The notes beneath the pieces were generated by a model. It was not told the origin of the DNA, did not search any database, and saw only the letters and a program-made list of their open reading frames with translations. From assembly GCF_006345805.1 (NCBI RefSeq), contig NC_043004.1, positions 83,018,001 to 83,082,000 on the forward strand: DNA of 64,000 nucleotides, in the 5' to 3' direction. Both the position numbers and the translations under genes were made by a program. This DNA comes from Octopus sinensis. Its lineage: Eukaryota. Below are positions 8,133 through 57,033 of the stretch, piece after piece (positions within the stretch are counted from its first letter, which is position 1; each line of letters starts with the position of its first letter).

Positions 8133-9185
8133 AGACGAATTAAACACCAGTCCTCTGTATATCAGATATGAAAAATATACTCCAGACGTTATTCCTGAAA
8201 CAACTTGTAGTACGTAGCCTTTCTGATTGACTAAGTCAGTTGCTATTTCATATGCTATAATACACCAGTTAAAAGTGAATATAAATGCCATCAACCCATT
8301 AGAAAACTGAAATAGTGAGTTAATTCTTTTCGTCAATTGACTCAGTCTAGTATGATGGTTAATTATTTGTGTTAATATTTCATTAAGATTTCTATGTCTC
8401 TCAGAGATTCTTCTGTTCGAATGTTGAATTTCCTGTATGGACTTTTTAAGTTTATCTGATAAATAATTAAATTCTTTTGTGAATATTGATGTTAATGCTT
8501 CATATAATCTGTCAGGTGACAAAATAAGGATAGCATTCCATATATCTGTTGAGAAATTTAATATCAACATAAACCCAAAAAACTTATTTTCTCGTGTTAA
8601 TGGAAATCCTAACACTTCCAAAAAATATTCCGGATCAACTAAAGTTGCCGGTAAAATAATTTGGCATATAGCGGCTATGACAAAATAAACTTGTATATAA
8701 ATTAAAACAGTACATGCTCCAAATTTGTTGTACCGTTTCATCAATATATTATTTGGACATATTGGAATATAAGTTTGGAAATCATCGATTAATCCGTAGA
8801 TGTGATTCCGTTTCCAGATAACGGTTAGTGATAATAAAGTTGGAAAAACCTTCGTCATGAGCATGTACAATTCCCCTAATATATATTTATTCTTGTTTGA
8901 TGTATAACGTGCAACAATAAGCCATATCAAGCGTACAATATCAATTGAGGAGATTAAATAGAGTAAAGGGAGACATAAACACAGAATTCGTGTTTTCACA
9001 CCAGATCTTTTCCACATTTCTAAACTTATTTTAGAAGGAATAGAAGATACAACTGCAAGACGTCTGATTTTCTCCAGGTATTCATTGAAGGTGCTCTCAC
9101 TTACGGGTTTTGGAGAGTTGTCGTCCATTCTTATATAAACCGAATGTGATTCAGATATTTTGGTGCCTGATTCATATGATTCCAT
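8133..9185 (-). CDS. GRL variable exon V1 (TM1-TM6, 351 aa, intact)
   Basis: ORF 8106..9185 has six hydrophobic segments and the GR-type KEFNYLSDKL...IINHHTRLSQLTKRINSLF segment; ends FNSS|GTAAGT in phase 0; acceptor TTTGCATTCAG at 9240. Confidence 0.85.
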
Positions 9186-15700: not shown

Positions 15701-15756
<56 letters not shown>

Positions 15757-15759
<3 letters not shown>

Positions 15760-16559
15760 TATTGAGATTTATAGGATTCTGAAAGAGTCCATAGTCTTTA
15801 TATTCCTGCATGTAGATTCCAAACTTGTGTGATAAATATTTAAATTCTTCTATACCAGTTATCAATATTATAGTGGAAAATGTGAGACATGGTACTACAT
15901 ATATCCTATTGCATACATCGGTAAAGAAATTCAGTATTAAAATGAAATTCTTCTCACGTGACACTGGAAAGAATGCCACGTCTAAAGAATATTCCAGATC
16001 AAGAAGAACTATTGGCAAAATAATTTGGATTATAGCAGATATTACAACAGAAATAGCTATTTGAATTGCGATGAAATGTGAATTAAATTTAATATATCTC
16101 TACATCAATATATCCCTTGGGCATATTAGAATATAAGTTTTAGCATTGCTGATCATTTCGTTGAGGTGTACTCGCTTCCAGACAAGGATTAGTGATAGTA
16201 TTCCTTGGTATATTTTCATCAGAAAGAAAAAAACATTTTCCTAAAAGATATTTCTCATTCGATGAGGAACTTTCTACAATAAACCATATGAAGCGCAAAA
16301 TATCATACGCTGAGATTAAATAAATGAAAGGGAAATATAGATAAAGAATGCATGTTTTCAACTCAGTTCTTTTCCAAATGTCTGAGCTCATTTTAGAAGG
16401 AATAGAACAAACACTTTTAAAACGTCTGATTTTCTCCAGATATTCAAAGAGTGCCGTTTCATTTGCTGTTTTTGGAGAGACGTTTATGTTTATCTGAACG
16501 GAATGTGATTTCCGAATATTAGTTAATGTTTCAGATGTTTCCGTAACTGAAACAGCCAT
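15757..16559 (-). pseudogene. GRL variable exon V2, degenerate
   Basis: Closest to V1 (SHSV, LEKIRR, SIPSK.S, WKR). Frameshift near 16225, in-frame TAG near 16098, and homology stops after TM4 at a (TA)n/SINE block; no TM5-TM6 or donor found. Confidence 0.8.
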
Positions 16560-21714: not shown

Positions 21715-22760
21715 ATTGAAATTGAGCTGAAGACCTTTAGATATCATTAGGAAACTAGATGATGCTAGTCCCATTCCAAAAATCAGTTGGATTATATATC
21801 CTTTCTGATTTATTAATCCATTGGAGATTTCATGAGCTAGTACACAACAAGTAATAATGGACAGAAAAAATGTAATGGCGACCGTAACATAAGACGCTTT
21901 GTTGTTAATCTTAAGTAAGCGACAAAGTTTACGATGCTGCTTAATTATCTTATCTAATATATCAATGCAAGGAGTTTGGGTGGGAGATATATTTGTATGA
22001 TCGTCTTGGTTTTCGGGAAAATAAACTTGGAGTGTCTGTGATAAAACTTTAAACTCATCTATCATGATTAACAGTAATCCAACGAGTAAGATAAAGTTTG
22101 GTGCAATGAAAATTGTCACCAATGAATTTATCATCCAATTAATTACCAAACTAATTAAAATAATTCGCTCCCACGTAATATCGGGAAAGCCATGACATCA
22201 AAGAAGAAATCTGGATCTGCCAGTGTCATAGGTATAATGATGTAGAGAGCAAAATTCACCACGACAATACAGCATGCGTTATAAACGATAAAATATGTAC
22301 CCATGGTGTTATATCGAGCCATATATTTAGCATTTTGGTTTATTGGAATGTAGGTACCGAACTCGTGGATTAACCTGTTGATATTAAATCTGTTCCAAAA
22401 CATGTTTATTGAAATTATACATGGATATGCCTTCAGCAAAAGGAGGAAACTTTTCCCAAAGAGTGGCCCAAGCTTTTCCTTCGAATAGTTTTTTATGATA
22501 AACCAAGGCAAACGTATAATATCAATCATAGAAATTAAATACACAAATGGGATTAATATATAAAGTATTCGTGTCTTTATTCCAGAAACTTTCCACGTTT
22601 CTACATTTATCGCATAAGGAAAGTATCCCATAATGGAAATCTTTTTAATTTTTAGCAGAAATGAATTCAGAATAGTATCTTTAATCGCATTTGATTTAGA
22701 ATGATCGGTAATTATATTGTACGAGCCACATACTTCCACATTTGAATGTAATAATTCCAT
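21715..22760 (-). CDS. GRL variable exon V3 (TM1-TM6) with one 1-nt frameshift near 22155-22160
   Basis: ORFs 22155..22796 and 21673..22149 join into one paralogue if one T is added to TTATTTTAATT; ends LNFN|GTAAGT in phase 0; acceptor TTAAGCAG at 22809, ATG at 22760. Confidence 0.8.
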
Positions 22761-29570: not shown

Positions 29571-30626
29571 ACTGTCATTAATCTTAATTCCTGAATAGAG
29601 CCGACATACACAAAATGTTGCACTCATTGCAGCAGGAGCAATTTGGAATGTATAGCTTTTTGCAGTGACTAGGTTATTTGAAAGTTCATATGCTATCGCA
29701 CAGAGGTTTATCATGTGCAGAAATAAAATCACAGCAGTGAGAAACTGAAATACCTTATTTGCAATATTTAATAATCGACAGAGTTTTGCATGTTGGTTAA
29801 TTAGTTCAATTAATCCTTCACTGCGATTTGCATGTTCTTCGAGCATATGTTTCCGATTACCTTGTTGGTGTATGAAGTTTCTGAATATCTCTGACAAATA
29901 ATTATATTCATCAATGAAAAATGATTCAAATATACCTTCTATAGCTATATAAGGAAGATAAATAAATAGGCTGAATATAGAGGATAGAAAACTTATGATC
30001 AACATAAGCAAATATAAATTGCTGTCTCTTAATACAGGGAAAGTTAAGATGTCCAGTAAATAAAGGGGGTCCTGGAAAACTACGGGAAAAATAAGTTGAA
30101 ATACAAAACAGGACAGAAAATTTAAACAGACATTAGATTTGAGGTAACGCATTCCAAATTTGTAGTATTTCTCCATAAATCTTTCATCCTGATGTAGTGG
30201 TACATAGTCTTCATATTCCTGGAGTAAGTGATTTATATCATCTCGTTTCCAGATAATGATTAGAGCAGTTGTAGTTGAGAACAATTTTATAAACATAACC
30301 AGAAATTTTGCTAAAGCATCTCCACCATCATTTGATAAAAGATGTTCTACTATAAACCACGCAATACGGAAATTATCAATTAATGGAACCAAATATAATC
30401 CAAGAAGACAGAGATACAACATTCGTGTTTTCAGGGTAGAATTTTTCCAGATTTCTAGGTTAAATTTTGAAGGAACATAGCGTACAATTGCTACATGTTT
30501 CAATTTCTGTATATATTCATTTAGACTGGTTTCCTTTACTGCTTTTAGCAATAGAGAGGTGTTTTCCATATCTATACTACATGAACTTGTCTTCCACGTT
30601 TTGTTTACTTCATTTGGTGATTCCAT
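29571..30626 (-). CDS. GRL variable exon V4 (TM1-TM6, 352 aa, intact)
   Basis: ORF 29553..30626 is paralogous to V1 (WK.S..KTR.L, IIWKR, DP.Y.L..L.FP, EYNYLS, LINQHAKLCRLL); ends INDS|GTAAGT in phase 0; acceptor TTTACAAG at 30650. Confidence 0.85.
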
Positions 30627-42338: not shown

Positions 42339-42404
42339 TCAAGAATCTGTGGGCCTTTTGGTCTGTAGAACAACAATCACGTAAGTGAACAGGCTGCCAA
42401 ATAT
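42339..42404 (-). CDS. GRL-A terminal exon (IFGSLFTYVIVVLQTKRPTDS*)
   Basis: TTCACTTGTTTTATAG acceptor; TYVIVVLQ is the TM7 signature of GR/GRL proteins; TGA at 42339-42341. Confidence 0.85.
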   Translation of the reverse strand: MFGSLFTYVIVVLQTKRPTDS

Positions 42405-42533
42405 CTATAAAACAAGTGAAACGAAAAGAAAATGTAACAGCTGAAATACGAAGTTTTTCAATGCGAATATTTGTAATTTTCGTAGCAGTAAATACATACG
42501 ACGCTATTATTATTTGCTATTATTTTTATTGTT

Positions 42534-42568
<35 letters not shown>

Positions 42569-42842
42569 TCTATGTTTGACTTTTGCTTTATATTTGTACA
42601 AGTTGGCTCCAAGTTTCACAAAGAGACTTCATGAGACAACAGGTTGGAAGTTCATGTTATTATGTCTAGTGTGCCATATATTTTTCTTTGTGTTGTACTA
42701 ATGAATATCTAAAAAAAACCCCGAAAATTATGTTTGTTTTAAACCCTGCGATTACATAGACAGTATTTTCCGTAGGATATGAGTAGTTCCCATGAGCACT
42801 ATCTTTTGAATTTTTGCCATTTTTGGGTTTCCTGGTGTCTGA

Positions 42843-42878
<36 letters not shown>

Positions 42879-43504
42879 GTTATTATTATTATTGTTGTTG
42901 TTGTTGTTGTCATTATTATTATTACTATTATTATTTTTATTAGTATTACTATCATTATTATTATTATTCAAATTATTAATTTTAATACATTTAATCTGTT
43001 GCTGTCGCTTTGTTTTATATAAGTTGTTCCTTGAAGTACCCAGGGCCCTCAAGAAGCAGAAAATGTGTTGCTTTACTCTGGAAGTTCTTTATGGTAGTAA
43101 TTTTTTATTTCACAGAATGGAAACCAAGTACTCATAATTAAGCTCTCTTAGAAGCTTGCTGTAATATTTCCGACTTTTAAAAGACATCTGAGAATATCTG
43201 ATTATTATGGTCTCCATATATTTAGCCATAATATTTCCGAACGCCCGACTAATATCACAAAAGCTTTGATGGTCACAGGTACACCTGTTTTACTATTTAC
43301 CTTTTTATTTTATTATTTTTTTATGTCACATCTCTGAGATTTTGGATTTCAATGTTCATTGATTCACTTATCCCATCATATCATTTTTACAAAAGCCTTA
43401 CGAACTGGTGAGGCTGTCATATGTGCATGCATCATGGTTTACGAATGTGCTGATTTTTAGTGGGGTGACGGAGCAGGGAAACATTACTGTTTCTATTATT
43501 ATTA

Positions 43505-43584
<80 letters not shown>

Positions 43585-46500
43585 GTTGTTGTTGTTATCA
43601 TTATTATTATTATTATTATTATTGTTATTATTATCATTTATAATTTCCTTTCATTATAATTTTATTTCAGCTGCCTTAGTACCAGGCATCCTCCCGAGGA
43701 CAAGATTAGCAAAGACACTTTTGTTTCGCTATGCGTGCTAAAATTATCACCACATTTATTCCACTTAAGATAGAGAGGGCTTTCTATAGTATATGGACTG
43801 TACCTATCAAGTTTATCTTTTGTAGTTCACATTATTATTATTATTATATGTTTGACTTTTGCTTTATATTTGTACAAGTTGGCTCCAAGTCTCACCCGGA
43901 GACCTTAACAGACAACAGGTTGGAAGGCCACGTTGTTGTTATGCCTAGTGTGCCATATATTTGGTTGTTTTTTGTGTTGTACTGGTGGATGTCTAAAAAA
44001 AATGTTTGTTTTAAACCTTGAGATTACATAGAAAGTATTTTGCGTAGGATATGAGCAGTTCCCATGAGCACTATCTTTTGAATTTCTGCTATTTTGGGGT
44101 TTCCTGGTATCTGAGTTAGGTAGCAATCAGCCCCTTTTGCTATCATTCCCAGGGCACCTATGACAACAGGTATTGTTTTAGTCTTCAGGTTCCACATTTT
44201 GCTGATTTCTATTTCAAGATCTTTATATTTGCTGAGTTTTTGATAGGTCTTGACAGATACGTTTATATCGATTGGGACAGTCATATCAATGAGAAGGAAT
44301 GTTCTTTGTTTGAAGTCTTTCAATATGATGTCTGGCCTATTTGCATCTATCTTTCTGTCAGTTTTCAAGCACTGGGGGTGGTTTGTGTTCCCACCATTTT
44401 TTTTCATGGGGCAAATCCAGGTTTTTGCAGATTACCCAGTGAATATATTGTGCAGCTCTATGATGCCTGTTGAGATACTCTGTAGGCGCTAGAATACTGC
44501 ACTTGGAGACCACATGATCGATGGCTTCATTTTGTTGCTGGCATACACGACGCGTTGGGCTACTGCCAATTTTTAATATGTTGGCCTGGTAGTTTCTTGT
44601 TGGTAGGCATTAATCTTGAGCTGCTATGATAAACCCCTCTGTTTCAGATTTTAAGCCAGAGGCCATTAGCCATTGATGGGTCAGGGCTTTGTCAACATCT
44701 GCATTATTCGCTCTCTTTGGGTATTTGCCATAGAGAGGTTTTTCTTGCCATTTATCATTCAGAATATCTAAGGCCGCAGATTTAGCACCGGTTTTCATGC
44801 GCTTAGCTTTTTCTATGCCTGTTTCTTGTATGTCTCTCTCTAAATCCGAAATTTGTTGTATTCGGAATTCACTTAGATAATCCTTTGCCTGTTTTGTTAC
44901 TGAGTATGATGTTTTCTTGTTTTCATGTTTTGAGACAAGTTTTAACATCCAGTCCTCAGAGTTTTTCAGGTAGGTGTCTAGGCCAATTGTAGCAATCTTC
45001 ATTGTTATTGCCAGTTGTAAAAGTCCACGGCCTCCCTCTTTTCTTGGCAGATAAAGTCGTTCTGTATCTGCCTTAGGGTGGTGCATTCTATGCATTGTCA
45101 ACAGTTTTCGTATTTTTCTGTCAAGATTACATATTTCAGTAATTGACCAGTTAACGATATTGAAACTGTAAGTCACGACTGGTATAGCTAATGCATTGAT
45201 CGCTTCAATCCTGTTTCTCGCATTCAGCTGTCTTGAGTATTGCTCTTACTCTGCGATAACATTCTCTCCTGATCCATTCCTTCAACTCTGAATGCCTTAT
45301 TCCGTCTCCTTCAACTACCCCTAGATACTTGGAGTTCTCCGCTGGGTCTAATTCTTTTATGACATTCTGCTGGTCAAGGTAAACGTTAGATGTTTCTGTC
45401 ATTTTTCCTTTGATAAAGGTAGCTTTTGCACACTTATCGAGGCCAAATTGCATTCTGATGTCATCACTGAATTGTTTGACAATCGCTAGTAAGCCCTTGA
45501 GTTGTTAGTCATTTTTTGCAAAGAGCTTTAAATCATCCATGTAAATGAGATGATTTATATTTTTATTAAACATTTTATATCGGTGCTGCGCGTCATTGAG
45601 CAGTTTTGAGAGAGGTATTAAGGCTAAACAAAAGAGGAGTGGTGATAGTGAGTCACCTTGGAAAATTCCACTCAATTTTTACATCACCAGCATTTAGGGA
45701 TTCATTGTCACTGTTCAAAGTTAGTGTGGTTCTCCATGATCTCATACCTACAGACAAAAGGTTTCGCAGAGTAGGTGCTATCTTATACATTTCTAGGCAT
45801 TTCTTAATCCAGCTATGTGGTAGGCTATCAAAAGCCTTTTTATAGTCTATCCAGGCTATTGATAAGTTTTTGTGTCGTTTGTGACCATCTTCTAAGATCA
45901 TCTTATTGGTGAGTAGTTGATCTTTACAACCGTAGGATCCACGTTTACATCTTTTCTGTTCATTAGGGAATATGCTGCTGTCTGTCAAAAAACTATAGGT
46001 ATATTCCGTCAGGACAGATGTTAGTGTTTTATACGTAGTTGTTAAGCAGGTTATGGGTCTATAGTTTTTTGGTTCATTTGTTTCTTCACTTTTTGGAGGC
46101 AGGAATGTTAACCCATTAACTAGCCAAGGAGGCATCCTACTAGGGTGTTGCAAAACATCATTGTAAAGTTCTGTTAGCAGTTCATGGCTCTCTGGGAAGG
46201 CATTCAACCAGAAGTTAGGGATTTTATCCTTTCCTGGAGACTTCCATTTGCTTGACCTCCTGAGAGCAGATCTTATATCTTCTACCTTGACACCCTCCCA
46301 CTTTTGCTCTTCTAACGAGTCCAGTTCTTTAGATATTCTATCAATCCAGGGGGCCTTTTCGCTGTATGTTTTTTCTTCTGCCCAAATTTTATTCCAAAAT
46401 CCCTGCACTTCTTCTTTTGATGGTACAGACTTTACAGTAACTGGAGTTTTTCCTATCTTCCTGTAAAAATTTTTGGGGTTATTTTTGAATCTAACACGCT

Positions 46501-47956
46501 TTTCATACCTAGCTATGCGGGCAGCTTTAGCAGATACCTTTTGCTTGATGGTTTCTAGGGTGGCATCAATATCAAGTATAATTTCCATATTATATTTTTT
46601 CATTAGTTTTTGGGTTTTTGTAGGTTTGGAAGTCTTATGAACCGTAAGGTTTTTCAAATATTCAATGTCAGATCTAAATAGTTTAATTTGTTGTTGCAAA
46701 CGCTCTTGCCAAGAAGGCTTTTTGTGGAAATGTTGCCGCTTTCTAATCTTTACACCACATAGGATCGTTGAGATTTTCACGGATGCATAGTATAGGTGGT
46801 TGAGATCTGTGATATCAACATCATTAGCTGAAATTATGTCCTTAAATGCAAGCCGGGTTTTATCAATTATTTTCATGTTTTGGTTAGAGTTGCGGATTTT
46901 AGGGAGTGTATCACATTCATCCATACTGGTTTCTTTAATTTTCAGCCATTCAATCATGATTTGACTTTTTAGCTCATATAGTTCTGTCGGGTCAATATTT
47001 GTGTGACTTTCTTCATCTATCTGATGTTCATCTGTCTTAGTGTTTATTTTGGTTCAGGGAGTATTTCACTTTGGCTATCACTTATACTAACTCTTTCAAT
47101 CCTTACTTCGTTTTTATCAGCTCTGGGCTGGTCTATAATTATTTCCTCTGTATTATCTTCTCTAGCTGCAGCTTCGTTCATTCTATCCGTTACTGCTTGT
47201 CTAATTTGATCAATCTCTACTTCAGTCAGAAATTTTTTAATAATGTTTCTTCTGACGTTGGCAAGTTTGTTACTGTCTAAGTAGGGTCTTGCTTCAGGGT
47301 GTTTCTGTCTCCAGTTTATGTAGGTTTGTATAGTGTTCGATTTATCTGTGGGGAAATATATGGCATGGTAGAAGGCCGCAAGAACTTCTTTATTATCTTC
47401 CCTAGTGCATTTTTCCTTCTTTTTCTTTTGAGTGTTTGGTGACGAGCATGGATGGCCATCTGTTGGGATATTCCAGTTGTGGGGTACGTCCAGCTCCTGT
47501 GTGTCGAGAAGATTTGATCCAGTAGCTGATTTTTCAATCAGACTTTGGTTCAATTTTCGGGTACGTGGTCTTTTGTAATCCGCTCGCCGACCATCGCGGT
47601 TTTTAGTTTGTTTTGTTGACATTGAAGCATGACGAACTTCGACTCTTACATTAAGAGACGGATCTGTCAGTTTAGGATTCTCTGCACGTAAACATTGTTC
47701 GTAGCGCAGCTTCTTAAGACTAGCAGATCTGTATTCGTCGTGTATTTTTTTTGTTGATAGATTTATCTCCGGGCATAGTTTTCCCGTTTTTTTTCGTTTT
47801 TTTTTAAAAACTTATGAAAGGTTCACTCTGCCTGTATTAGTTCGAAACAATGAGAATAAAATACGCGAAAAAAAAAAGAAAAATTATCATTACCACTATC
47901 ATCACCGTCATCATCATCATCAATGTTAGTTTCTTATGTGTAGTCACAGCGGTAGC

Positions 47957-47987
<31 letters not shown>

Positions 47988-47998
47988 CATTATTATTA

Positions 47999-48048
<50 letters not shown>

Positions 48049-48898
48049 CACTATCACCATCGCCTCGGTAAAGAGGTCATGTTCTATAGGTCTATAAATA
48101 GATTCAGCAGATGGTGGACTGGTCAGCCAAATAGACAAAGGACATTTTGGGTCAGGGAAGGTCAAACCTGTTTACAAGCAACAGCGTTATCTTGACAAGC
48201 AATTCAGCTTGTTATATTTGTAATTAATGGTAGGAAGAGAAAAAAAACTATATATATATATATGTATATACCCATACACATATGTATATGTATATTCACA
48301 CACGCATATTTTCTGATAGTCACGTCGATGATTTTTTAAATTTCTGAGTTCAATTGTGTTGTTGCAATAAAAGTTACGTGTTTACGTGTTTGGGTAATAT
48401 ATTAAAGTTTTTAAGTATACTTGAGAGGTCCATTTGGAAAAAGCAATAAGATTTTTGCAATGGGAAGAATGTTTACATTTTCGAATGCTCAGAAAAAAAA
48501 ATGCTCAGAAAAAGAAAATGCTCAGAAATCTTTCTTTTCTTTTTTGTAGTTGTGAAGTGTATATATATTGGCAGGTGCTTACTTCCATAGTTTTTTTATC
48601 GTGCATTTAATTGTGTTGTTACAATAAAAGGCAAAGAAGGGACGACAAACTGTTCACACAAAATTGGAGATATTTATGATTCTAAACTTTTTTAGGTGTT
48701 CGCTTGTATGTCCAAAGCTGTAGATATGTAAGTTCCTTATTTGAGGGAAATTCAAATTACTCACAGAAAACAGAAGATCTTCCAGTTTTTTACAGATGTT
48801 CTTTTCAGTTGTCCCGCTAGGTTGGTCAGAGCAGCGAAAAACACGTCCAGCTTCTATCACGTACAGCCGCCTTCCTCTATCACGTCCAGCCGCCTTCC

Positions 48899-48993
<95 letters not shown>

Positions 48994-49207
48994 TATTATT
49001 ATTATTATATCGTCGAGAGCCACTAAGGGACATGCTCAACTTGTTAAGGTCAAACAACTGTCAAGCAAATGTGTGGTATTGAGCAAAATATTTGCTGTAG
49101 CCTATCTTTTATACCAAGACAAAACATTGTAAATAACACTTCCAATTAGTTAAGATCAGAAGCCACGAGAGCCACTGCTTGGTACTACATCAGGCCATTT
49201 ATTATTA

Positions 49208-49300
<93 letters not shown>

Positions 49301-49372
49301 CCCAGAAGAAGATTGATTTAAAATTTTGGAACAAGGCTAATGATTTCTGGGTAGGGAGTGAGACGAAGAATG

Positions 49373-49411
<39 letters not shown>

Positions 49412-49419
49412 TAATAATG

Positions 49420-49481
<62 letters not shown>

Positions 49482-52400
49482 GTAATAATAATAATAAATA
49501 ATAAACAATAGAGGCAACTCGGTTAAATGTAAATTTAATATCTACATAGAATTAAACAAATTATGAAAATGAATACAAATCCTTGCTATTATGTTAACTG
49601 GCGAATGTCCAAATTTGGCCAAATTTGTTTGTCTTCGAAATTTACTTTTGCTTGCAATAGTCATCTCTTTTGTTCAAACTTTCGCATCTCCAGCTACTTC
49701 AGAAGCCAACATGTAAGAAAGTGTGAAAGTCTAGTACAACAGTTATGTTATGGAAAGGTGAAACTACTTCTCCGTTTTCTGAAAAAGGATCGTTTTTGGA
49801 CTTACGACACTTTTGCATGATAGCAACGAAATGTATATGAATTGGAAGGGTCGATAATTATATTTACCGTTAGGATAGAAGATGGTCTTATAACAAAGAA
49901 GCCTCCAACGCTTATACCACTTGGGGTTGTGTTTAATCTATCGAGAAATAATGTCAACTGTAAATAGAGGTATGAAAGAATTTAGCAAAAATACTTTTAA
50001 TATCACCTGATGGTATTTTATACCAGGTCATAATAAGTATTTCCTTGGAATGTTCTTTGTGATAGAAATTTGCTTCATGAAACACTGCAGGATAGTTATT
50101 CAAGAATACAGAAAGGAATAAATTATTTACTAGGAACAAGTCTGTTAGCTTTAAATTTCATATTTGTATAAATTTTACAATATATATTAACGGTTGTCTG
50201 CTTCAAACGCTTCAATGGCATGCTCACTTTTCATATTTTGTCTAAAGGTGAAATTTAAAAAAAATGTTTTTGTAAAGAATGTTAAATTTTGCGTATAAGA
50301 GAGCTTTTTAATAGTAACTTTATAGGAAGAAAGTACATTGCCTTAATTTTGTTATACAGTGGTCAGGATTAGTACATCCTTTAAGCATTTCTATTATATC
50401 ATTAGTTTTTGAAAACAGACAGCAAATATATTAATGATATATATATATAAAAGAAAGCATATTATTAAAATATAAAGCAATATAATACATTGATATTACA
50501 AAATTTTATATATACTCATTAACACCAACAATACTAAATTGAGTCTTTATGTAGAGGCTTATAATGTTAAAAAATGCAGCTCAAATATCTTTCATATTAC
50601 ATCTTTCTTTATGAAACAATATAATCTTATATTTGCGGAAACTAGTAGGTGGACAAGATTTTTGTACTAGGGACAACTTTAATAATTGATCCCAATAAAT
50701 GCTACTTTGCGCTGAACAACAAGCTCATTTTATGTTTCATTAACTTTTTTGAATCGCATTTCTTATTATCAGTCCACTGAAGGACAAGGGCTCAGTATAT
50801 TATCTCCGCCGAACACGGTCCAATATGGAAGCCATGGATTTGAGCTTGGATCATACTGGTATGATGAGCCTACTTGCCACTCTGGTTCCACATGGCTTGT
50901 CATAGAGGAGCAGTTTTTTTACTCTTACCCAGGAATAGGGAAGTCGATTACATCAATCTCAGTCCTCGACTGGTACTTAATTTATAGATTCCGAAAGGAT
51001 GAAAGCAATATCGACCTCAAGGTACTTGAACTCAGAAGGTAAGGACGAACGAAATACCGCTAAGCATTTCGCCCGGCGTGTTGACGATCTTCCAGCTCGT
51101 CTTAAACGACCGAAATCAGGATATGTTTGTTTCACTTCTCCCCGACTAAATTACTGAAATATATAAATTGGTATCAAATAGGAACTAAAGTAAAATAAGA
51201 CTAAAAATCACCCAACCAAGTATCAGAAACATTAAAGCTACATTTTCTGCAGTTCTACCATATTTTAAGTGTGATTGCAACATCTAAAGAATGAAGCTCT
51301 TCATAAAAGTACTCGCTTCTGTAACAAAACGGGACACCAAAGTATACTCATTAGTGTATTCAGTATATTACAATTGTGTTTAAGACATTTTTCTCGAGTA
51401 CAGTTTTCCTTTACGCGATATGTATTTATATAAATTTACATAAATGCATATACGTGGTCTGATGATTAATTATCAGCACTGTTGCCATAGTAAAGAAGCT
51501 AAAGCACACAGAGTGAAGCCGCATGGCAAAGATAGATCGTCAACTCTGTTCTGATGTTAAAACTAAGTTTTAACATTCTAGCTCACTTCCTCTGTTGAAA
51601 GCAGTGCTTGGAAGGAAGGTGTGTAGCGTGTGATCGTCGCATTGAAGATGACAGAGAAAGCTGAGCGCAGATTCCACATCAAATTTGTCAAAAGCTTGGC
51701 GATACCTGCTCAGAGACCTACGCAATGTTTCCATAAAATCTTCATCGTTCTCGACAGAGTTAAGGATATCTTGTGAAACTGAACCCCGACCTTTCTTTGG
51801 TTTGCTGAAAGCAGTTTTGGCACAAACTTGGAAGACAGAGGTTTCTCATAACCAAATCGTCAGTGATAATGGACTGAACTGAACTGTAACTAATCTGCAC
51901 ATCCTCTGGTAACACACGATTTGTGATTCGACAGCTTTCCTTCAAAGTTGCACGCACATCAGCGATGTCTTTCTCAGCTCTGCTGGTTGCGGGTCTCCTA
52001 CAAGTTTCATTAAAAACGATATTTTTTCGGCCATCTTCGAAATGTCTGAACCACTCGTACACTTGTATGCGGCTCATACATGCACTTTCTGCAATTTGTG
52101 CCTCTGAACAGGTATCGCTATGGCAACGTTCTCTGTCATGGTCAATGTGCCGATCACACGTTACACACTCTCCTTCCAAGCACTGCTGCAAACAGTGGGA
52201 GCGAACTAGAATGTTAAAATTTGGTGCACATGTACAACCGCTTCGTTACTATGGCAACTGTTCTGATACTTATTGATCAGATCTCACATTTTTTCTGTCT
52301 TTTCATGAGATTAACCATTGCCTCGTTTTGCAAGAAATCTATATATATAAAACTGTAGTTGTGTGAGTGTCTGTCTCCTACGATTTAGATTCCTAACTCC

Positions 52401-53486
52401 TCCCACATTTTGCGGTGCAGTTTAACCAAATTCGGGTATCTTATAGTCGTGATTAATATCGAGCCCGTCTGGCTATTAACGCGCGTCTACGACGAGTCTA
52501 CGATTTTAAAAATAATTTAACATCATTTTTTATTCCATTTTAATGCATAATTTTTCGTGTGTCGATGGCGGCGGAGTTGGCGTCCACGCTCAAACACCTG
52601 CACCTGTGTTTGCTTCTCCCCCTTCTTCCCTCCCTCGTGAAGCTGTGGGGAAGGGAGTTTAAGGAAATCAACGTCGTAATGCGTTGTCAAGGAGACCAGC
52701 GTTCTTTTAGAACAACGACTTGAAGACACCAAAACAGAAATGGCTAAGAAAGTCCGAATTGGCATCTATAAAGGAAGTAACTCTCTAAAAATGCTTATAT
52801 AGTTATTTCCCTTACAAACCCGAGCAACGCCGGGCGATACTGCTAGTATATAAATAACATCAAAATGCATATTTCTTTAATTTTATAGCTCTGTACATAT
52901 TATCTTACAATTTAATTTCCCATATTTTACTCAATCAGATTGAAAATCATTGAATATATACCTTCATTCTGGTTTCAGTTGACAAACCTTTAAAATTCAT
53001 GGCGTACAGATCTTCGACGATATCATGGATCTATGATATCAAAATAAGGTGAGACATTTAGGTTAATAGATATGTCATGGCTTACTAAAAAGTATTACAT
53101 ATTGTAACAATGAAACAATGTGTATTGAAGCCTTATTAAACACAACGTAAGGAAATATTCCATGAGATAATCGAGAGATAATTTTCACCTAACATCAATG
53201 TTTATAATTTGGACATTAAATGCCATCTCAAATCGTGGAATTCGTATCACCGGTTTACTTGCCCAGTTTACATGGCGTATAAGAGACCGAGATCACTACA
53301 TTTTTCTTTGGACAAGAAACGATGACGATGATTGGGAATGTGAATGTGATGATGATGATTATGATGATGATGATGACGACGACAATGATGAAGATACCTC
53401 AACATTGGGCTGCGTCATCGGATCTTCTGTTGTCATACTTATAACATCTCATTAACGTATATATATATATATATATATATATATGC

Positions 53487-53518
<32 letters not shown>

Positions 53519-53520
53519 GT

Positions 53521-53551
<31 letters not shown>

Positions 53552-53884
53552 CAAAACAGTTTGATTCAAATTTCTATAGTAATTTAAGTTTCAGAGCGTG
53601 TTGCTAATTCTCAGCTCTAATTTATAATGCCAGAGAATTAACATCTAACTTTGAAATTGGAAGTAATAAAGGAATTTGACTCAAAATGTTTTGATCCATA
53701 CTTATCGCTCCCAATAACTGTGTTGAGTGTCCTTCCTTCGTTCTTCCACTTACTCGCGTATATATATAAGTTCAGTAAAATTTAGATTCAGTTGAATGTG
53801 GTACTTAAGTTAAAGGCGCCAGAATTTAGTAGGGTATTATTCATATAATTCAAAATGCGGTGATTACAATCAAAATAAGCAACT

Positions 53885-53932
<48 letters not shown>

Positions 53933-56856
53933 AATATATGTACAGCTTCGCAACCAGATGGTGTATAAAATGAATGCAAGAGCTCCTATCTATAATAGCT
54001 CTAATACCTTTCATAAACCCTGTCGCTTTTAAAAGTGTGGGCTCTACCCGTAATAGGATTCGTGTTTTCATATAGCGATAGATCAGTCGCACATTCAGAG
54101 TAAGATCCTTGATCCTGAGTTCACATCCTTCGTATACTGCAAAAGATTCTGCATTGATTTCATTCGCATTGCTGTTACCGTTGTTGCTGAACGCTGCTAC
54201 TGCCACACGCTTCTACTGCCGCACGCTGTTGCTGCTGCACGCTGCTTCTATTGTTGAGACTGAGGCGTTGCTCTAAGTTGGGGTGCTCCTTACCTAATGT
54301 TTTAAGGCAGAAATCTATGAAGTGGCTTATTACATCACATAAGTGGCATCCTTACTTCTTACCCTCAATCACACCTCTGCTCCTCTGAGCAAATAGATTA
54401 TTTCTGGGATCTTTTCCACCTCCTATCCCGGGTTGGACACCCGATGGAAGATATCTACTGTAATCCAAACCAATCCACCACCACCATTATCACCGTCGTC
54501 ATCAGAGAAGGTACTAGTCGAATTCATCGTCCCCCAGTGCTTAACTGGTACTTATTTCCTTGAATCTAAACTTATGAAAGGCAAAATCAACTGCGGGGGA
54601 ATTTGAACGCAGAACGTAAAGACGGACTTATGACGCTAATTTTTTTGTGCGTAGTGCTAACAATCTTTTAAGTTCTCTGCCTTAATCATAATCAATTTTA
54701 TGCTTTCTATTACAGGTGCTAGGTCTGAAATTTCGGCTACGGAAACTTGTTGTTTACATCGACCCAACCCCCGATTGGTACTTATTTTATTATCTTCGCA
54801 AGAATGAAAGGTGAAGTCGACCTCGACGTAATTTGAAATCACAACGCAAAAACGACCAAAATACCGGTGTTCTAAGAATACACGCACCTTGTCGCTTTAA
54901 TGGTAACAATCCTTTCTCATATTGTCACAAAGAACTGAAGATTTGTGGAGTGGGTGTCAATCGATTACATCGACACCAGTACTCGACTGATACTTATTTA
55001 ATAAAACCCGAAATAATAAAAGGTAAAGTCGCTCTCGGCTGAATTTGAGCTCAGAACATGAAAACGGACAAAATACTGCTAAGCATTTTCTCAGGCCCGC
55101 TACCAATTCTGCAAGGGCACCGAGTTAATAATAATAACAAGGGAAAAGCTTCACTTATTGGCCCACGACATTCACCATACATACATGGGTTGTTACGAAA
55201 ATACTATGTATTGGAAATCGTTTCACTTCATGCAAAATTATGTTATTCAATATTAGCCAATCATCAACGAATGATGCTTTTTCATATGATACTGGTAGCT
55301 TGCTAAACACATAAAATACACTAAATAAAACATTTCACCATGTATAATAATTTTATGTTATCAGCATTAATTCTTCATGTGGTACTTTGCAGTCTTGCTT
55401 AAAAAGAACTCCTAGTTAATAACCGGATGCTGAATACTGATAGGATGTACATTAAGTATTAAAATCAGTTACTATTTAACCAGGCCATATCTGGCTCAAT
55501 ATAGTACAGGTGGTATGATGCTATGATGAAACTGGCCAGATCCGATTTCTCACAACTACCCTACAAAATCATCCTAAAAGTAAACACTCAAATCACCGAA
55601 ATCTCGATGACTAATTCAAAGCAATTTGAATATATAAGAATTACATTTAACAGAGTAATCTGAATGCGGAATGTTTAGAAAAGTTTAGCACTTCGCTGTG
55701 AGAAAAACTTTTTGCATAGCTGCTTTATTATTTATCAACTTATGATGGATTAAATTAATTTGGATCATTATCTAAACAGATGCATTCTTTTATTAACTTT
55801 ATATTTGGTTATTTGCAAATAAGTTTAAAATGTTATAATACTTGCATTTTGATGAAGCTTCATTCCTCTGTAAAGCACCCATCCGGCTATCAGGGAAAGT
55901 ATTATCGGTAAAATACATACAATTAGCAGCTCATTACTTTTCAAGAAATCATTCACAAATCCATAAAATAAGGTACACAATCCTAGTATCATGTTCATTA
56001 TCAATGATGACGTGTTATGTTGCAATGCTTTATCTGTCTCATCCAATAAACTACACATTTCTTCATGTTTTGTGCAATAATACATGATCATTTCGTTTCT
56101 CTGCATCCACTCATTGCTGAATTGCTTACTGGCGTCTGCATTTAAAACGTCCCGATATTTCTCCCTCAGAACACCAAATTCTATAATTAAATGTTCTACT
56201 ATAACCCAACACAAGTTAAGTTGGGGCAAAATTTGCAGAATAACGAACGTAAATATAATCCAGCCTAACAAAAGAGGCACAAAAATATAAACACTATTAG
56301 AGGGAATAGGATAATAAAATAATTCAAAAATACTAAGTTGATTGTAGGACAATATTGGTAACACAACCGTTAGACATGGGTATAAAATAAACGCTAATAT
56401 AAGTTGAAAGATGATTCTAACTTGGTCAATTTTCAACAGAATGTCGCGCTTAAAATCACAATTATCACATACACACACAAGTGTACTATTTCTAAATGCT
56501 TCCTTTAGCATTTCATAGGTTCCAGATTTATATAGTATGATGATAGAGTATAAAAAATAACAAAATTTCCATTCTACCAGCATACAGATAGTCAATGGAC
56601 TTGAAGATTTTTTACAGATCATTATCCAGAAGGCACACACCGAAAATCTGAAACAATCAAAGATAGCCAAAAAGAAGAACATGCAATGCAAAATGTATTT
56701 CAATCTTTCCTTGTAATTTGACGACGAAAAGGTAGATAAGGAAACCTTCTGATGGAAAATAAAGAATTTCTCCCGTAATACAATTCCATTTTTCAGTTTA
56801 CTTCGTTTAATGATTTCTTCTCTCACTGCACTGAATTTCTTGTGATTTTCTGTCAT
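42339..56856 (-). CDS. GRL-A: gustatory-receptor-like 7TM chemoreceptor (7tm_7 / insect GR-OR superfamily), 4 coding exons, about 411 aa
   Basis: Hand-assembled exons 55846-56856 (337 aa, six hydrophobic segments), 52962-53030, 49868-49957, 42339-42404; all introns phase 0 and AG-terminated. C-terminus reads IHDIVEDLYAMNFKGLSTETRMK|LTLFLDRLNTTPSGISVGGFFVIRPSSILT|IFGSLFTYVIVVLQTKRPTDS*, matching the GR/GRL pattern F..L.....i..gGfF.i and TYhhhhhQ in TM7. Confidence 0.85.
42570..42846 (-). mobile_element. Short 3' fragment of the same Dong/R4-type LINE
   Basis: EIQKIVLMGT.HILRKILSM* terminus plus 3' UTR shared with the other two copies; flanked by (ATT)n on both sides. Confidence 0.85.
43847..47800 (-). 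mobile_element. Near full-length Dong/R4-clade non-LTR retrotransposon (RT, zinc knuckle, restriction-like endonuclease), disrupted
   Basis: YRPITCL, WIDYKKAFDSLPH, YMDDLKLF (about 45510-45545), QFGLDKC, RPDIILKD..LIDMTVP, KLSKYKDL; N-terminal KLAN.RRNI segment. 3' end abuts (TAA)n. In the last intron of GRL-A. Confidence 0.85.
49868..49957 (-). CDS. GRL-A coding exon 3 (LTLFLDRLNTTPSGISVGGFFVIRPSSILT)
   Basis: TTCTTTCATACCTCTATTTACAG acceptor, 90 nt phase 0-0, ACG|GTAAAT donor; typical GR pre-TM7 exon with GGFF motif. Confidence 0.85.
51453..52288. mobile_element. Mariner-derived element made of two 5' ends in inverted orientation
   Basis: About 40-bp terminal inverted repeats (TTGCCATAGTAA / TTACTATGGCAA core). 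The + arm encodes MTEKAERRFHIKFVKSL; the - arm encodes the HTH region (VYEWFRHFEDGR, RPATSR). Confidence 0.7.
52338..52846 (+). mobile_element. Non-autonomous Helitron-like element, second copy with about 200-bp extra internal segment
   Basis: Same termini and body as 13797-14101; inserted at A|T. Confidence 0.65.
52962..53030 (-). CDS. GRL-A coding exon 2 (IHDIVEDLYAMNFKGLSTETRMK)
   Basis: TTTTGATATCATAG acceptor, 69 nt open phase 0-0, AAG|GTATAT donor; fits the intracellular loop after TM6. Confidence 0.7.
55846..56856 (-). CDS. GRL-A coding exon 1 (TM1-TM6)
   Basis: ORF 55825..56892; acceptor TATATTTTTGCAG at 56868 precedes ATG (MTENHKK). Contains the GR-type IEFGVLREKY...H..MCSLLDETDKAL segment. 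Ends LHQN at a GCAAGT donor homologous in position to the GTAAGT donors of V1, V3 and V4. Confidence 0.85.
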
Positions 56857-57033
56857 TTTTGTTGAATCTGCAAAAATATATGTGTTAATCACTATGTAGT
56901 AGAGTGATAAATAAGTTACGCATTTTGTTGTTTGAATGTAATAATGATTATGTTGTCGCTAATTTGTTCATGAACAACATTGAACATCCTAAATCATAGC
57001 AAATACTATTTATTCATAGAACGATGTATTTAC

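What the first reader, a model, noticed from the sequence alone, without database searches (positions are those of the whole stretch)
42339..56856. Complete insect-GR-like 7TM ion-channel chemoreceptor gene in a probable octopus genome
Seen: a 411-aa model with six N-terminal TMs, a long loop after TM4, a GGFF motif and TM7 TYVIVVLQ, interrupted by three phase-0 introns near the C-terminus. Established: insect GRs and non-insect GRLs share C-terminal phase-0 introns and a TYhhhhhQF motif, and are ligand-gated channels unrelated to GPCRs. The well-known octopus chemotactile receptors are nicotinic-receptor-derived, a different family. Inference: a tandemly expanded GRL family could be a little-studied second chemosensory system. 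Tiny exons spread over 14 kb of repeats are easily missed by annotation.
Basis: partly seen in the sequence, partly recalled or inferred. Interest (0 to 1): 0.82.

Follow-up and report, generated by a model that had tools for sequence, protein, structure and literature searches.

The report
Octopus taste-receptor-like gene, alternative first exon
The stretch encodes a genuine insect-type "gustatory receptor-like" ion-channel protein in Octopus sinensis. It is not a stand-alone gene: it is one unannotated alternative first exon, with an unusual GC splice donor, sharing three tiny end exons with a neighbouring annotated gene, inside a 1-Mb cluster built the way insect taste-receptor loci are.

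Summary
The 411-aa model is real. Minus-strand exons 56856-55846, 53030-52962, 49957-49868 and 42404-42339 join in frame, and all three introns are phase 0.

It belongs to the GR/GRL family. A profile of it and its mollusc relatives hits Drosophila Gr64a at E=5e-23. The AlphaFold model (pLDDT 87) matches only insect OR/Orco/GR structures (TM about 0.7), and no GPCR.

The window is Octopus sinensis chromosome C8. RefSeq XP_036361416.1 (LOC118764606) uses exactly these three C-terminal exons, but with a different first exon 13 kb upstream. No other C-terminal exon set lies between the two first exons. An O. bimaculoides protein named "Gustatory receptor" (90% identical) spans all three junctions.

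One caveat: this exon alone has a GCAAGT donor. The 17 neighbouring first exons, and an orthologue from another sequencing run, have GT.

The family forms arrays: about 48 intact first exons against 11 constant-exon sets within about 1 Mb. Four more first exons lie in this window.

Chemosensory function and expression are untested. I class it as a new member of a known kind, of moderate interest.

The parts
55846..56856 (-). Variable first exon 'B' of LOC118764606: ATG at 56856, 337 codons, helices S0-S6 (six TM segments).
   Evidence: Open frame. HMM of GRL first exons 243.8 bits. Orthologue L039 at 71% aa, dN/dS 0.40. Not present in any O. sinensis protein record.
55840..55845 (-). 5' splice donor of intron 1, GCAAGT (GC-AG type), phase 0.
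   Evidence: All 17 other first exons in the 264 kb examined have GTAAGT, GTGAGT or GTAAGA at the homologous site. The orthologue L039 has AAT|GTAAGT.
52962..53030 (-). Constant exon 2 (23 codons; end of S6 and start of S7a).
   Evidence: Identical in RefSeq XP_036361416.1. HMM 27.2 bits, the only copy between the two first exons.
49868..49957 (-). Constant exon 3 (30 codons; S7a, beta-hairpin with GGFF, start of S7b).
   Evidence: HMM 48.9 bits. DSSP shows strands at 376-382.
42339..42404 (-). Constant exon 4 (21 codons plus TGA): pore helix S7b with TYVIVVLQT.
   Evidence: HMM 33.1 bits.
44024..47811 (-). Retroelement remnant inside intron 3 (reverse-transcriptase ORF 45653-47053), flanked by (TTA)n microsatellites. 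It is filler, not part of the receptor.
   Evidence: Pfam RVT_1 36.1 bits. Tandem repeats.
29571..30569 (-). First exon of the next locus downstream (LOC118764605 isoform X2). Its constant exons lie about 156 kb away, at C8:82891552-82886329.
   Evidence: P0079 is 100% identical. Constant exons located. GTAAGT donor.
21718..22760 (-). Degenerate first exon of the LOC118764605 array (one frameshift).
15752..16523 (-). Fragmented pseudo first exon of the same array.
8133..9185 (-). Intact, unannotated first exon of the LOC118764605 array (351 codons, GTAAGT donor).
   Evidence: No O. sinensis protein holds it. Pfam 7tm_6 30.9 bits, above cut-off.

Best explanation
The finding is one isoform of an Octopus sinensis gustatory-receptor-like (GRL) locus, RefSeq LOC118764606, which belongs to the insect GR/OR '7TM ion channel' superfamily.

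**Locus layout.** Two tandem long first exons each carry their own ATG and encode helices S0-S6. Exon A lies 13 kb upstream, outside the window, and is the annotated one. Both are followed by one shared block of three short phase-0 exons (53030-52962, 49957-49868, 42404-42339). These encode the end of S6, S7a, a beta-hairpin and the pore helix S7b.

**How the isoforms arise (inferred).** By analogy with Drosophila Gr39a/Gr28b and cockroach Gr60a-m, transcription starts at one first exon. Its donor is spliced to the first available acceptor, at constant exon 2, so any downstream first exon is removed as intron. The result is two receptors with different ligand-sensing bodies and an identical pore helix.

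**The protein (inferred).** It should assemble as a tetrameric ligand-gated cation channel, with N-terminus inside and C-terminus outside.

**Doubt about isoform B.** Its donor is GCAAGT instead of GTAAGT, so it may be spliced inefficiently or not at all in this animal.

**Wider context.** The same architecture repeats across a 1-Mb cluster: about 48 intact first exons against 11 constant sets.

**Shown versus inferred.** Shown here: the gene structure, family membership, fold, exon sharing and cluster layout. Inferred: splicing of isoform B, promoter choice, channel function and a chemosensory role.
For: **Gene model**
- The exons join in frame and all three introns are phase 0.

**Family and fold**
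- Pfam 7tm_7 gives E=6.8e-5 for the protein alone.
- 45 of 49 aligned homologues hit 7tm_7, and 27 hit Trehalose_recp.
- The family profile hits DmGr64a (8jme) at E=4.6e-23 over nearly full length. It also hits Orco, MhOR5, Gr43a and BmGr9.
- The AF2 model has pLDDT 87.2 and pTM 0.86, with a split S7 and a hairpin.
- The top 22 Foldseek PDB hits are all insect OR/Orco/GR (8v02_A E=6e-8, TM 0.69-0.72). The next hits have E>0.1, and none of the hits listed is a GPCR.

**Exon sharing**
- The last 74 residues of XP_036361416.1 are identical to the window's exons 2-4.
- Its first 334 residues are encoded at C8:83087121-83088122.
- tblastn and exon HMMs find no other exon 2/3/4 copy between the two first exons.
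- The two first exons are sister in the tree, with 100/100 support.

**Splicing of exon B to the constant exons**
- O. bimaculoides A0A0L8FL56 (224 aa, 90% identical) spans all three junctions.

**Constraint**
- dN/dS is 0.40 against an orthologue from another sequencing run.

**Same architecture elsewhere in the cluster**
-. LOC118764605 and LOC118764607 carry isoform labels in RefSeq.

**Insect precedent**
- PMC2204066 (Gr39a) and PMC6175461 (cockroach Gr60a-m, 13 first exons into three shared short exons).
Against: - No transcript data were available, so no junction is directly confirmed for O. sinensis.
- Exon B's donor is GC with a T at position -1. It is the only one of 18 first exons examined without GT. 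RefSeq did not model this isoform.
- The single protein scores below Pfam's 7tm_7 cut-off (22.8 against 26.6 bits).
- The last position of the TM7 motif is T, not F/L/M, so the canonical hydrophobic gate residue is missing.
- A pyrimidine-CAG lies 11 nt upstream of the ATG. This leaves open that the first exons are internal cassette exons fed from an upstream non-coding exon, rather than promoter-linked first exons.
- The basis of the O. bimaculoides gene model (transcript or ab initio) is unknown.
Confidence: 0.8

Rival explanations
1. Stand-alone complete gene: exon 1 plus exons 2-4 are a private four-exon gene, and the upstream first exon belongs to a different gene.
For: The four exons make a complete ORF. 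The O. bimaculoides model joins the orthologous exon to the same 3' exons.
Against: RefSeq XP_036361416.1 uses these same 3' exons with the upstream first exon. No other C-terminal exon set exists in the 12 kb between the two first exons. The nearest other sets are at C8:83.108-83.102 Mb and 82.892-82.886 Mb. Without sharing, the intact upstream exon would lack a TM7.
Confidence: 0.08
2. Exon B is a recently disabled pseudo-exon. The GT>GC change at its donor prevents productive splicing in O. sinensis, so only isoform A is made. Unspliced transcripts would end 6 codons into the intron and lack TM7.
For: It is the only GC donor among 18 first exons, and the orthologue has GT. There is a T at -1, so two mismatches to U1. 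It is absent from RefSeq models. Several neighbouring first exons are clearly degenerate, so exon death is common here.
Against: The 337-codon frame is intact and dN/dS is 0.40. The remaining donor positions match the GC-AG consensus (GCAAGT). From general knowledge, GC-AG introns are spliced by the major spliceosome and are often linked to alternative splicing. The base could also be a polymorphism or an assembly error.
Confidence: 0.3
3. The protein is a GRL channel but not an external chemoreceptor. It could serve development, or internal, light or temperature sensing, as known for some GR/GRL members.
For: Reviews note non-gustatory roles: Gr28b in warmth sensing and a cnidarian GRL in body patterning (PMC11526382; cited in PMC7746228). 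No expression data link octopus GRLs to suckers. The literature searches found no octopus GRL study.
Against: A lineage-specific expansion to about 48 divergent variable exons, with frequent pseudo-exons and moderate dN/dS, is the typical signature of environmental chemoreceptor families.
Confidence: 0.3
4. The RefSeq isoform A is a prediction artefact. The upstream first exon is an orphan that lost its own 3' exons, and only exon B truly uses the window's constant exons.
For: Gnomon models can be ab initio, and I could not see transcript support.
Against: The upstream exon is an intact 334-codon frame with a perfect AAT|GTAAGT donor. The many-first-exons-to-one-constant-set pattern recurs at at least three other places in the cluster, including 13 intact exons upstream of one set.
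Confidence: 0.07

Closest known systems
Drosophila Gr39a / Gr28b / Gr23a and cockroach BgerGr60a-m (alternatively spliced insect GR loci)
   Same: Tandem long first exons each encode six TM helices, with their own ATG and 5' donor. They are spliced to three short shared exons that encode TM7. Degenerate first exons are interspersed (PMC2204066, PMC6175461). The protein superfamily and fold are the same.
   Different: This is a mollusc, at about 12-16% identity to the insect structures. The introns are very large (3-156 kb) and filled with retroelements. Neighbouring octopus arrays reach 13 or more intact first exons. The TM7 motif ends in Q-T instead of Q-F. This particular exon has a GC donor. 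Whether the architecture is inherited or convergent is unknown.
Octopus sinensis XP_036361416.1 (LOC118764606, 'uncharacterized protein')
   Same: Same locus. The last 74 residues, encoded by window exons 2-4, are identical.
   Different: It has a different first exon at C8:83087121-83088122, which is 44% identical. The window's isoform is not annotated.
Octopus bimaculoides A0A0L8FL56 ('Gustatory receptor', 224 aa)
   Same: Orthologue of the window isoform: 90% identical over residues 191-411, with the same three junctions.
   Different: It is a partial model that starts at an internal Met, and it comes from another species.
Mollusc GRLs (Haliotis, Patella, Argopecten, Sinanodonta; the family of Robertson 2015)
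   Same: 7tm_7 family with the same C-terminal block LxxFxxRLxxxxIGxxxxGLFxIxxxxxLTxxGxxxTYxxVxxQ.
   Different: The octopod sequences form their own clade (99/93 support). They replace the terminal F of the motif with T.
Clustered protocadherins / UGT1A (variable first exons plus constant exons)
   Same: Formal gene architecture: an array of variable first exons, each a complete ligand-facing module, joined to shared 3' exons.
   Different: Unrelated proteins. Promoter choice at each variable exon is established there and only conjectured here. I found no shared upstream motif across the octopus first exons.
Octopus chemotactile receptors (CRs, nicotinic-receptor-like)
   Same: Candidate contact chemoreceptors that are ion channels and are expanded in octopus.
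   Different: Unrelated fold (pentameric Cys-loop). The window protein matches only OR/GR structures.

Membership tests
GR/GRL family (Pfam 7tm_7; insect chemoreceptor / 7TMIC superfamily) | Significant sequence similarity to GR family profiles and to bona fide GRs | tested here: met
   The single protein gives 7tm_7 E=6.8e-5, 22.8 bits, below the 26.6-bit cut-off. At family level, 45 of 49 homologues hit 7tm_7. The profile hits DmGr64a at E=4.6e-23 over positions 21-377 of 391, and also Orco, MhOR5, Gr43a and BmGr9. The sister isoform P0003 carries a precomputed PF08395 hit.
GR/GRL family (Pfam 7tm_7; insect chemoreceptor / 7TMIC superfamily) | OR/GR fold: seven helices, long S4-S6 forming a cytoplasmic anchor, S7 split into S7a and S7b by a beta-hairpin | tested here: met
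   AF2 model with pLDDT 87.2 and pTM 0.86; helices and the 376-382 hairpin. The top 22 Foldseek hits are all OR/Orco/GR, with TM up to 0.72.
GR/GRL family (Pfam 7tm_7; insect chemoreceptor / 7TMIC superfamily) | TM7 motif (T/S)Yhhhhh(Q/K/E)(F/L/M) (PMC7746228, PMC12635824) | tested here: inconclusive
   T397-Y398-VIVVL-Q404-T405: three of four positions are met, and the gate position is T. The cited papers call the motif diagnostic but not definitive.
GR/GRL family (Pfam 7tm_7; insect chemoreceptor / 7TMIC superfamily) | [quoted passage not shown] | tested here: met
   There are three phase-0 introns. The RefSeq C-termini of two paralogous loci divide in the same register, with the 30-aa exon 3 found at matching genomic positions. 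Residue-level homology to insect intron positions was not tested.
GR/GRL family (Pfam 7tm_7; insect chemoreceptor / 7TMIC superfamily) | Intracellular N-terminus and extracellular C-terminus | not testable with these tools
   Inferred only from the full-length structural alignment to receptors of known topology.
GR/GRL family (Pfam 7tm_7; insect chemoreceptor / 7TMIC superfamily) | Tetrameric ligand-gated cation channel | not testable with these tools
   Needs electrophysiology or cryo-EM.
Alternatively spliced GR locus (Gr39a/Gr28b/BgerGr60 type) | Two or more tandem long first exons, each with its own ATG, six TM segments and a 5' donor | tested here: met
   Exon A (C8:83088122-83087121) and exon B (window 56856-55846) both have intact frames.
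Alternatively spliced GR locus (Gr39a/Gr28b/BgerGr60 type) | One shared block of three short 3' exons encoding TM7, with no private copies | tested here: met
   The RefSeq isoform A ends in the window's exons 2-4. No other copies lie between the first exons.
Alternatively spliced GR locus (Gr39a/Gr28b/BgerGr60 type) | A usable 5' splice donor on this large exon | tested here: inconclusive
   The donor is GCAAGT rather than GT. It is in frame and at the homologous site, but it is the only one of 18 first exons with GC.
Alternatively spliced GR locus (Gr39a/Gr28b/BgerGr60 type) | Transcripts showing mutually exclusive use of the first exons | not testable with these tools
   No RNA-seq was available. 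There are only gene models (XP_036361416.1 and A0A0L8FL56).
G-protein-coupled receptors | GPCR 7TM fold | tested here: not met
   There is no GPCR among the Foldseek matches with E<=0.001, nor among the 50 listed, and no GPCR Pfam family.
Octopus chemotactile receptors (Cys-loop / nicotinic-like) | Pentameric ligand-gated channel domains | tested here: not met
   No Cys-loop family appears in the Pfam scan. The fold matches are only OR/GR.

The most novel reading that the evidence does not exclude
The 1-Mb octopus GRL supercluster may work like clustered protocadherins. Each of the roughly 48 variable first exons would have its own promoter. Individual sensory cells would choose one or a few of them, giving a large repertoire of channels with different ligand-binding bodies on a handful of common pore helices that carry an unusual Q-T gate. 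This repertoire would be a second chemotactile or olfactory receptor system in cephalopods, alongside the nicotinic-like CRs. The variable-exon design may also be ancestral to protostome GR loci rather than an insect invention.
Probability: 0.15. Interest if true: 0.7.

Novelty: new member of a known kind. Interest (0 to 1): 0.42.

Why it matters
**Correction to the catalogue.** Octopus chemosensation is currently explained mainly by nicotinic-like chemotactile receptors and GPCRs. This locus shows that O. sinensis also has a large, mostly unannotated repertoire of insect-type GR-like channels. There are about 48 intact variable exons, and only a few are represented in RefSeq. Gene counts based on annotation therefore underestimate the family by several-fold.

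**Evolutionary question.** The 'many first exons, three shared TM7 exons' design is so far described for insect GR/OR loci. Finding it in a cephalopod raises the question of whether it is ancient or convergent.

**Experimental handle.** A single probe to a constant exon reports a whole array.

**Limits.** For this individual gene the result is modest. It is a correct family assignment, a corrected gene structure, and a doubtful splice donor.

Tried and rejected
- **Single-sequence search of PDB chains:** no hits. A family profile was needed.
- **Pfam 7tm_7 run over the whole genome:** gave only weak scattered hits and was not useful for a census.
- **Fetching the rest of the cluster:** Architecture outside C8:82.908-83.172 Mb therefore rests on search coordinates only.
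- **Look-up of the RefSeq protein's contig:** withheld.
- **A common promoter motif upstream of the first exons:** k-mer sharing only follows recent duplicates, so there is no protocadherin-like conserved element.
- **The alternative GT donor 5 nt downstream (55841-55840):** it would shift the frame into TGA in exon 2, so I rejected it.
- **Exact look-ups of the full and Met-truncated isoform B:** none is in the 15-billion-protein collection.
- **Literature searches for octopus or cephalopod GRLs:** nothing specific in the held library.
- **Rfam and tRNA scans of the window:** empty.

Full report
**1. Where the window comes from**

The window is G000:C8:83018001-83082000 of a 2.72-Gb, 13,516-contig genome. 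Contig C8 is 107,269,306 bp long. That is exactly the contig length recorded for Octopus sinensis RefSeq proteins that map here. One such protein is encoded letter for letter in the flanking DNA.

**2.

On the minus strand a 377-codon open frame contains the proposed exon 1. I joined 56856-55846, 53030-52962, 49957-49868 and 42404-42339. This gives a 1236-nt ORF and the 411-aa protein.

- All three introns are phase 0.
- All three acceptors are pyrimidine tracts ending in AG.
- The donors of introns 2 and 3 are GT.
- The only nearby GT, 5 nt further on, would shift the frame into a TGA in exon 2. The GC site is therefore the only productive donor.

GGFF is present in exon 3. T397-Y-VIVVL-Q404-T405 is present in exon 4. 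Hydropathy gives six hydrophobic segments in exon 1 and one in exon 4.

**3. Family and fold**

- Alone, the protein hits Pfam 7tm_7 at E=6.8e-5. At 22.8 bits this is below the 26.6-bit curated cut-off. It hits no PDB sequence.
- An exhaustive HMMER search found 73 relatives. Those I looked up are molluscan: Haliotis, Patella, Argopecten, Sinanodonta and Acanthosepion. Several are named 'Gustatory receptor' by their sources.
- Of 49 aligned members, 45 hit 7tm_7, 27 hit Trehalose_recp and 7 hit 7tm_6.
- A profile of that alignment hits Drosophila Gr64a (8jme) at E=4.6e-23 across nearly its whole length. It then hits Orco, MhOR5, Gr43a and BmGr9.
- AlphaFold2 with this alignment gives a confident model (pLDDT 87.2, pTM 0.86). 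It has long S4-S6 helices and an S7a, beta-hairpin, S7b arrangement. This is the layout described for GR structures (PMC12635824).
- The first 22 Foldseek PDB hits are all insect OR, Orco or GR chains, with TM-scores up to 0.72. The next hits have E>0.1, and none of the hits listed is a GPCR.

The family assignment stands.

The TM7 motif, as defined in PMC7746228, is (T/S)Yhhhhh(Q/K/E)(F/L/M). The protein matches three of the four positions. The last position forms the hydrophobic gate in insect GRs (PMC12635824), and here it is T. The three other octopus constant-exon sets whose exon 4 I read, and a cuttlefish sequence, also read Q-T. Most other molluscs read Q-F.

**4. It is not a stand-alone gene**

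- The best annotated relative is O. sinensis XP_036361416.1 (LOC118764606, 408 aa). It is 54% identical overall, but its last 74 residues are identical to the window's exons 2-4.
- Its first 334 residues are encoded by an intact open frame at C8:83087121-83088122.
- tblastn with the three small exons finds no other copy between the two first exons. HMMs built from each small exon give the same result.
- The two first exons are 44% identical and are sister to each other in a maximum-likelihood tree (100/100 support).

[quoted passage not shown] **5. Evidence for and against isoform B**

Against:
- No O. sinensis protein containing exon B exists in the 5.8-billion-cluster collection, either full length or started from any internal Met.
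- Among the 18 first exons I could read in 264 kb, exon B is the only one whose donor is GC. The others have GTAAGT, GTGAGT or GTAAGA at the homologous phase-0 site.
- The orthologous exon from sequencing run SRR11869385 has AAT|GTAAGT where the window has AAT|GCAAGT.

For:
- O. bimaculoides A0A0L8FL56 ('Gustatory receptor', 224 aa) is 90% identical over residues 191-411.
- The exon-B frame is intact. Nei-Gojobori dN/dS against the SRR11869385 orthologue is 0.40 (dN 0.165, dS 0.408), which indicates constraint.

From general knowledge, GC-AG introns are spliced by the major spliceosome when the rest of the site is strong. I therefore rate productive splicing of B in O. sinensis as somewhat better than even, and unproven.

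**6. The wider cluster**

Searches of the genome with four different first exons and two C-terminal peptides place every significant first-exon match except one weak partial hit (on C5) on C8 between 82.46 and 83.52 Mb.

- I count about 48 first exons with intact frames, plus at least 25 degenerate ones.
- Against these there are 11 constant-exon sets.
- In the 264 kb that I could read base by base, the order on the minus strand is as follows. Three intact first exons and one decayed one come first, then a constant set at 83.108-83.102 Mb. Exons A and B follow, then the window's constant set. After that, about 13 intact and about 6 degenerate first exons run from window 30569 down to C8:82.895 Mb, with no constant exons among them. 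Last comes a constant set at 82.8916-82.8863 Mb.
- RefSeq joins the first of those exons (window 29571-30569) to that distant set as 'LOC118764605 isoform X2'.
- Another intact exon of the array, window 8133-9185, is in no O. sinensis protein record.
- A plus-strand array of about 16 or more intact first exons at 82.50-82.78 Mb precedes the first plus-strand constant set, at 82.785-82.788 Mb.
- In the tree, all 23 O. sinensis first exons plus three octopod ORFs from sequencing runs form one clade apart from other mollusc GRLs (99/93 support). Each array is monophyletic. The family therefore grew by tandem duplication of first exons within octopods or cephalopods.

**7. Mechanism**

Shown: the gene structure, exon sharing, family, predicted fold and cluster layout.

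Inferred from the insect loci: transcription begins at one first exon. Its donor pairs with the first acceptor available, at constant exon 2, and any intervening first exons are removed as intron. Each isoform thus combines a private S1-S6 ligand-sensing body with a common S7 pore helix.

Inferred from GR structures: the protein forms a tetrameric cation channel gated at the outer end of S7b. With T in place of the gate F, neighbouring hydrophobic residues may provide the gate, as a valine does in MhOr5 (PMC12635824).

A conserved stretch of about 100 nt lies upstream of the ATG, and a pyrimidine-CAG lies 11 nt before it. These leave open whether each exon has its own promoter or receives an upstream non-coding exon.

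**8. Surroundings**

The 14.5 kb span is mostly intron. Intron 3 holds a retroelement remnant with an RVT_1 domain, flanked by (TTA)n microsatellites. No RNA genes were found.

**9. Novelty**

- GRLs in molluscs are established (Robertson 2015, as cited in PMC7746228).
- The O. bimaculoides orthologue already bears the name 'Gustatory receptor'.
- The alternative-first-exon design is well known in insects.
- New here are the unannotated isoform, its GC donor, and the recognition that the octopus family is organised as large variable-exon arrays that annotation largely misses.
- I found no paper in the held library that describes octopus GRLs. That library omits most subscription journals, so this is weak evidence of novelty.

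**10. Verdict**

This is a new member of a known kind, of moderate interest. The chemosensory role remains to be tested.

Noticed in passing
window 8133-9185 (-): Intact 351-codon GRL first exon with a GTAAGT donor. It belongs to the LOC118764605 array and is absent from all O. sinensis protein records. On its own it scores above Pfam's cut-off for 7tm_6 (odorant receptor), at 30.9 bits.
   Followed up: partly
window 29571-30569 (-): First exon of RefSeq LOC118764605 isoform X2. Its three constant exons are about 156 kb downstream, at C8:82891552-82886329, so the first intron skips about a dozen other first exons.
   Followed up: yes
window 21718-22760 (-) and 15752-16523 (-): Decayed GRL first exons, one with a single frameshift and one in fragments. 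Exon death is common inside the array.
   Followed up: partly
window 56857-56960 (-), L039:1-104, L002 upstream of the ATG: About 100 nt upstream of the start codon is conserved between the window exon, its orthologue and partly its paralogue. The conserved part includes TGATTAAC and a pyrimidine-CAG 11 nt before the ATG. It could be a promoter or 5'UTR element, or an acceptor for an upstream non-coding exon.
   Followed up: partly
window 42339-42404 (-); C8:83101843-83101890, 83171912-83171965, 82886329-82886469: All four octopus constant sets whose exon 4 I read end the TM7 motif in Q-T, not Q-F. They therefore lack the phenylalanine that forms the hydrophobic gate in insect GR structures. 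A cuttlefish homologue does the same, whereas most other molluscs keep Q-F.
   Followed up: partly
window 45653-47053 (-), 35901-36827 (-), 62226-63920 (-): Retroelement remnants. Two ORFs have Pfam RVT_1. The third is a 565-codon ORF with a YRDD motif and a long asparagine-rich tail, and it has no Pfam match.
   Followed up: partly
window 42844-49504: Six (TTA)n/(TAT)n/(AAT)n microsatellites of 74-145 bp surround the intron-3 retroelement. They produce the long poly-I/L/N/Y pseudo-ORFs seen on both strands.
   Followed up: no
C8:82504809-82781091 (+), outside the window: A plus-strand array of about 16 intact and many degenerate GRL first exons spans about 280 kb before the first detectable plus-strand constant set, at 82785443-82788356. 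If all of them share that set, it would be larger than any insect GR locus quoted in the papers I read.
   Followed up: partly
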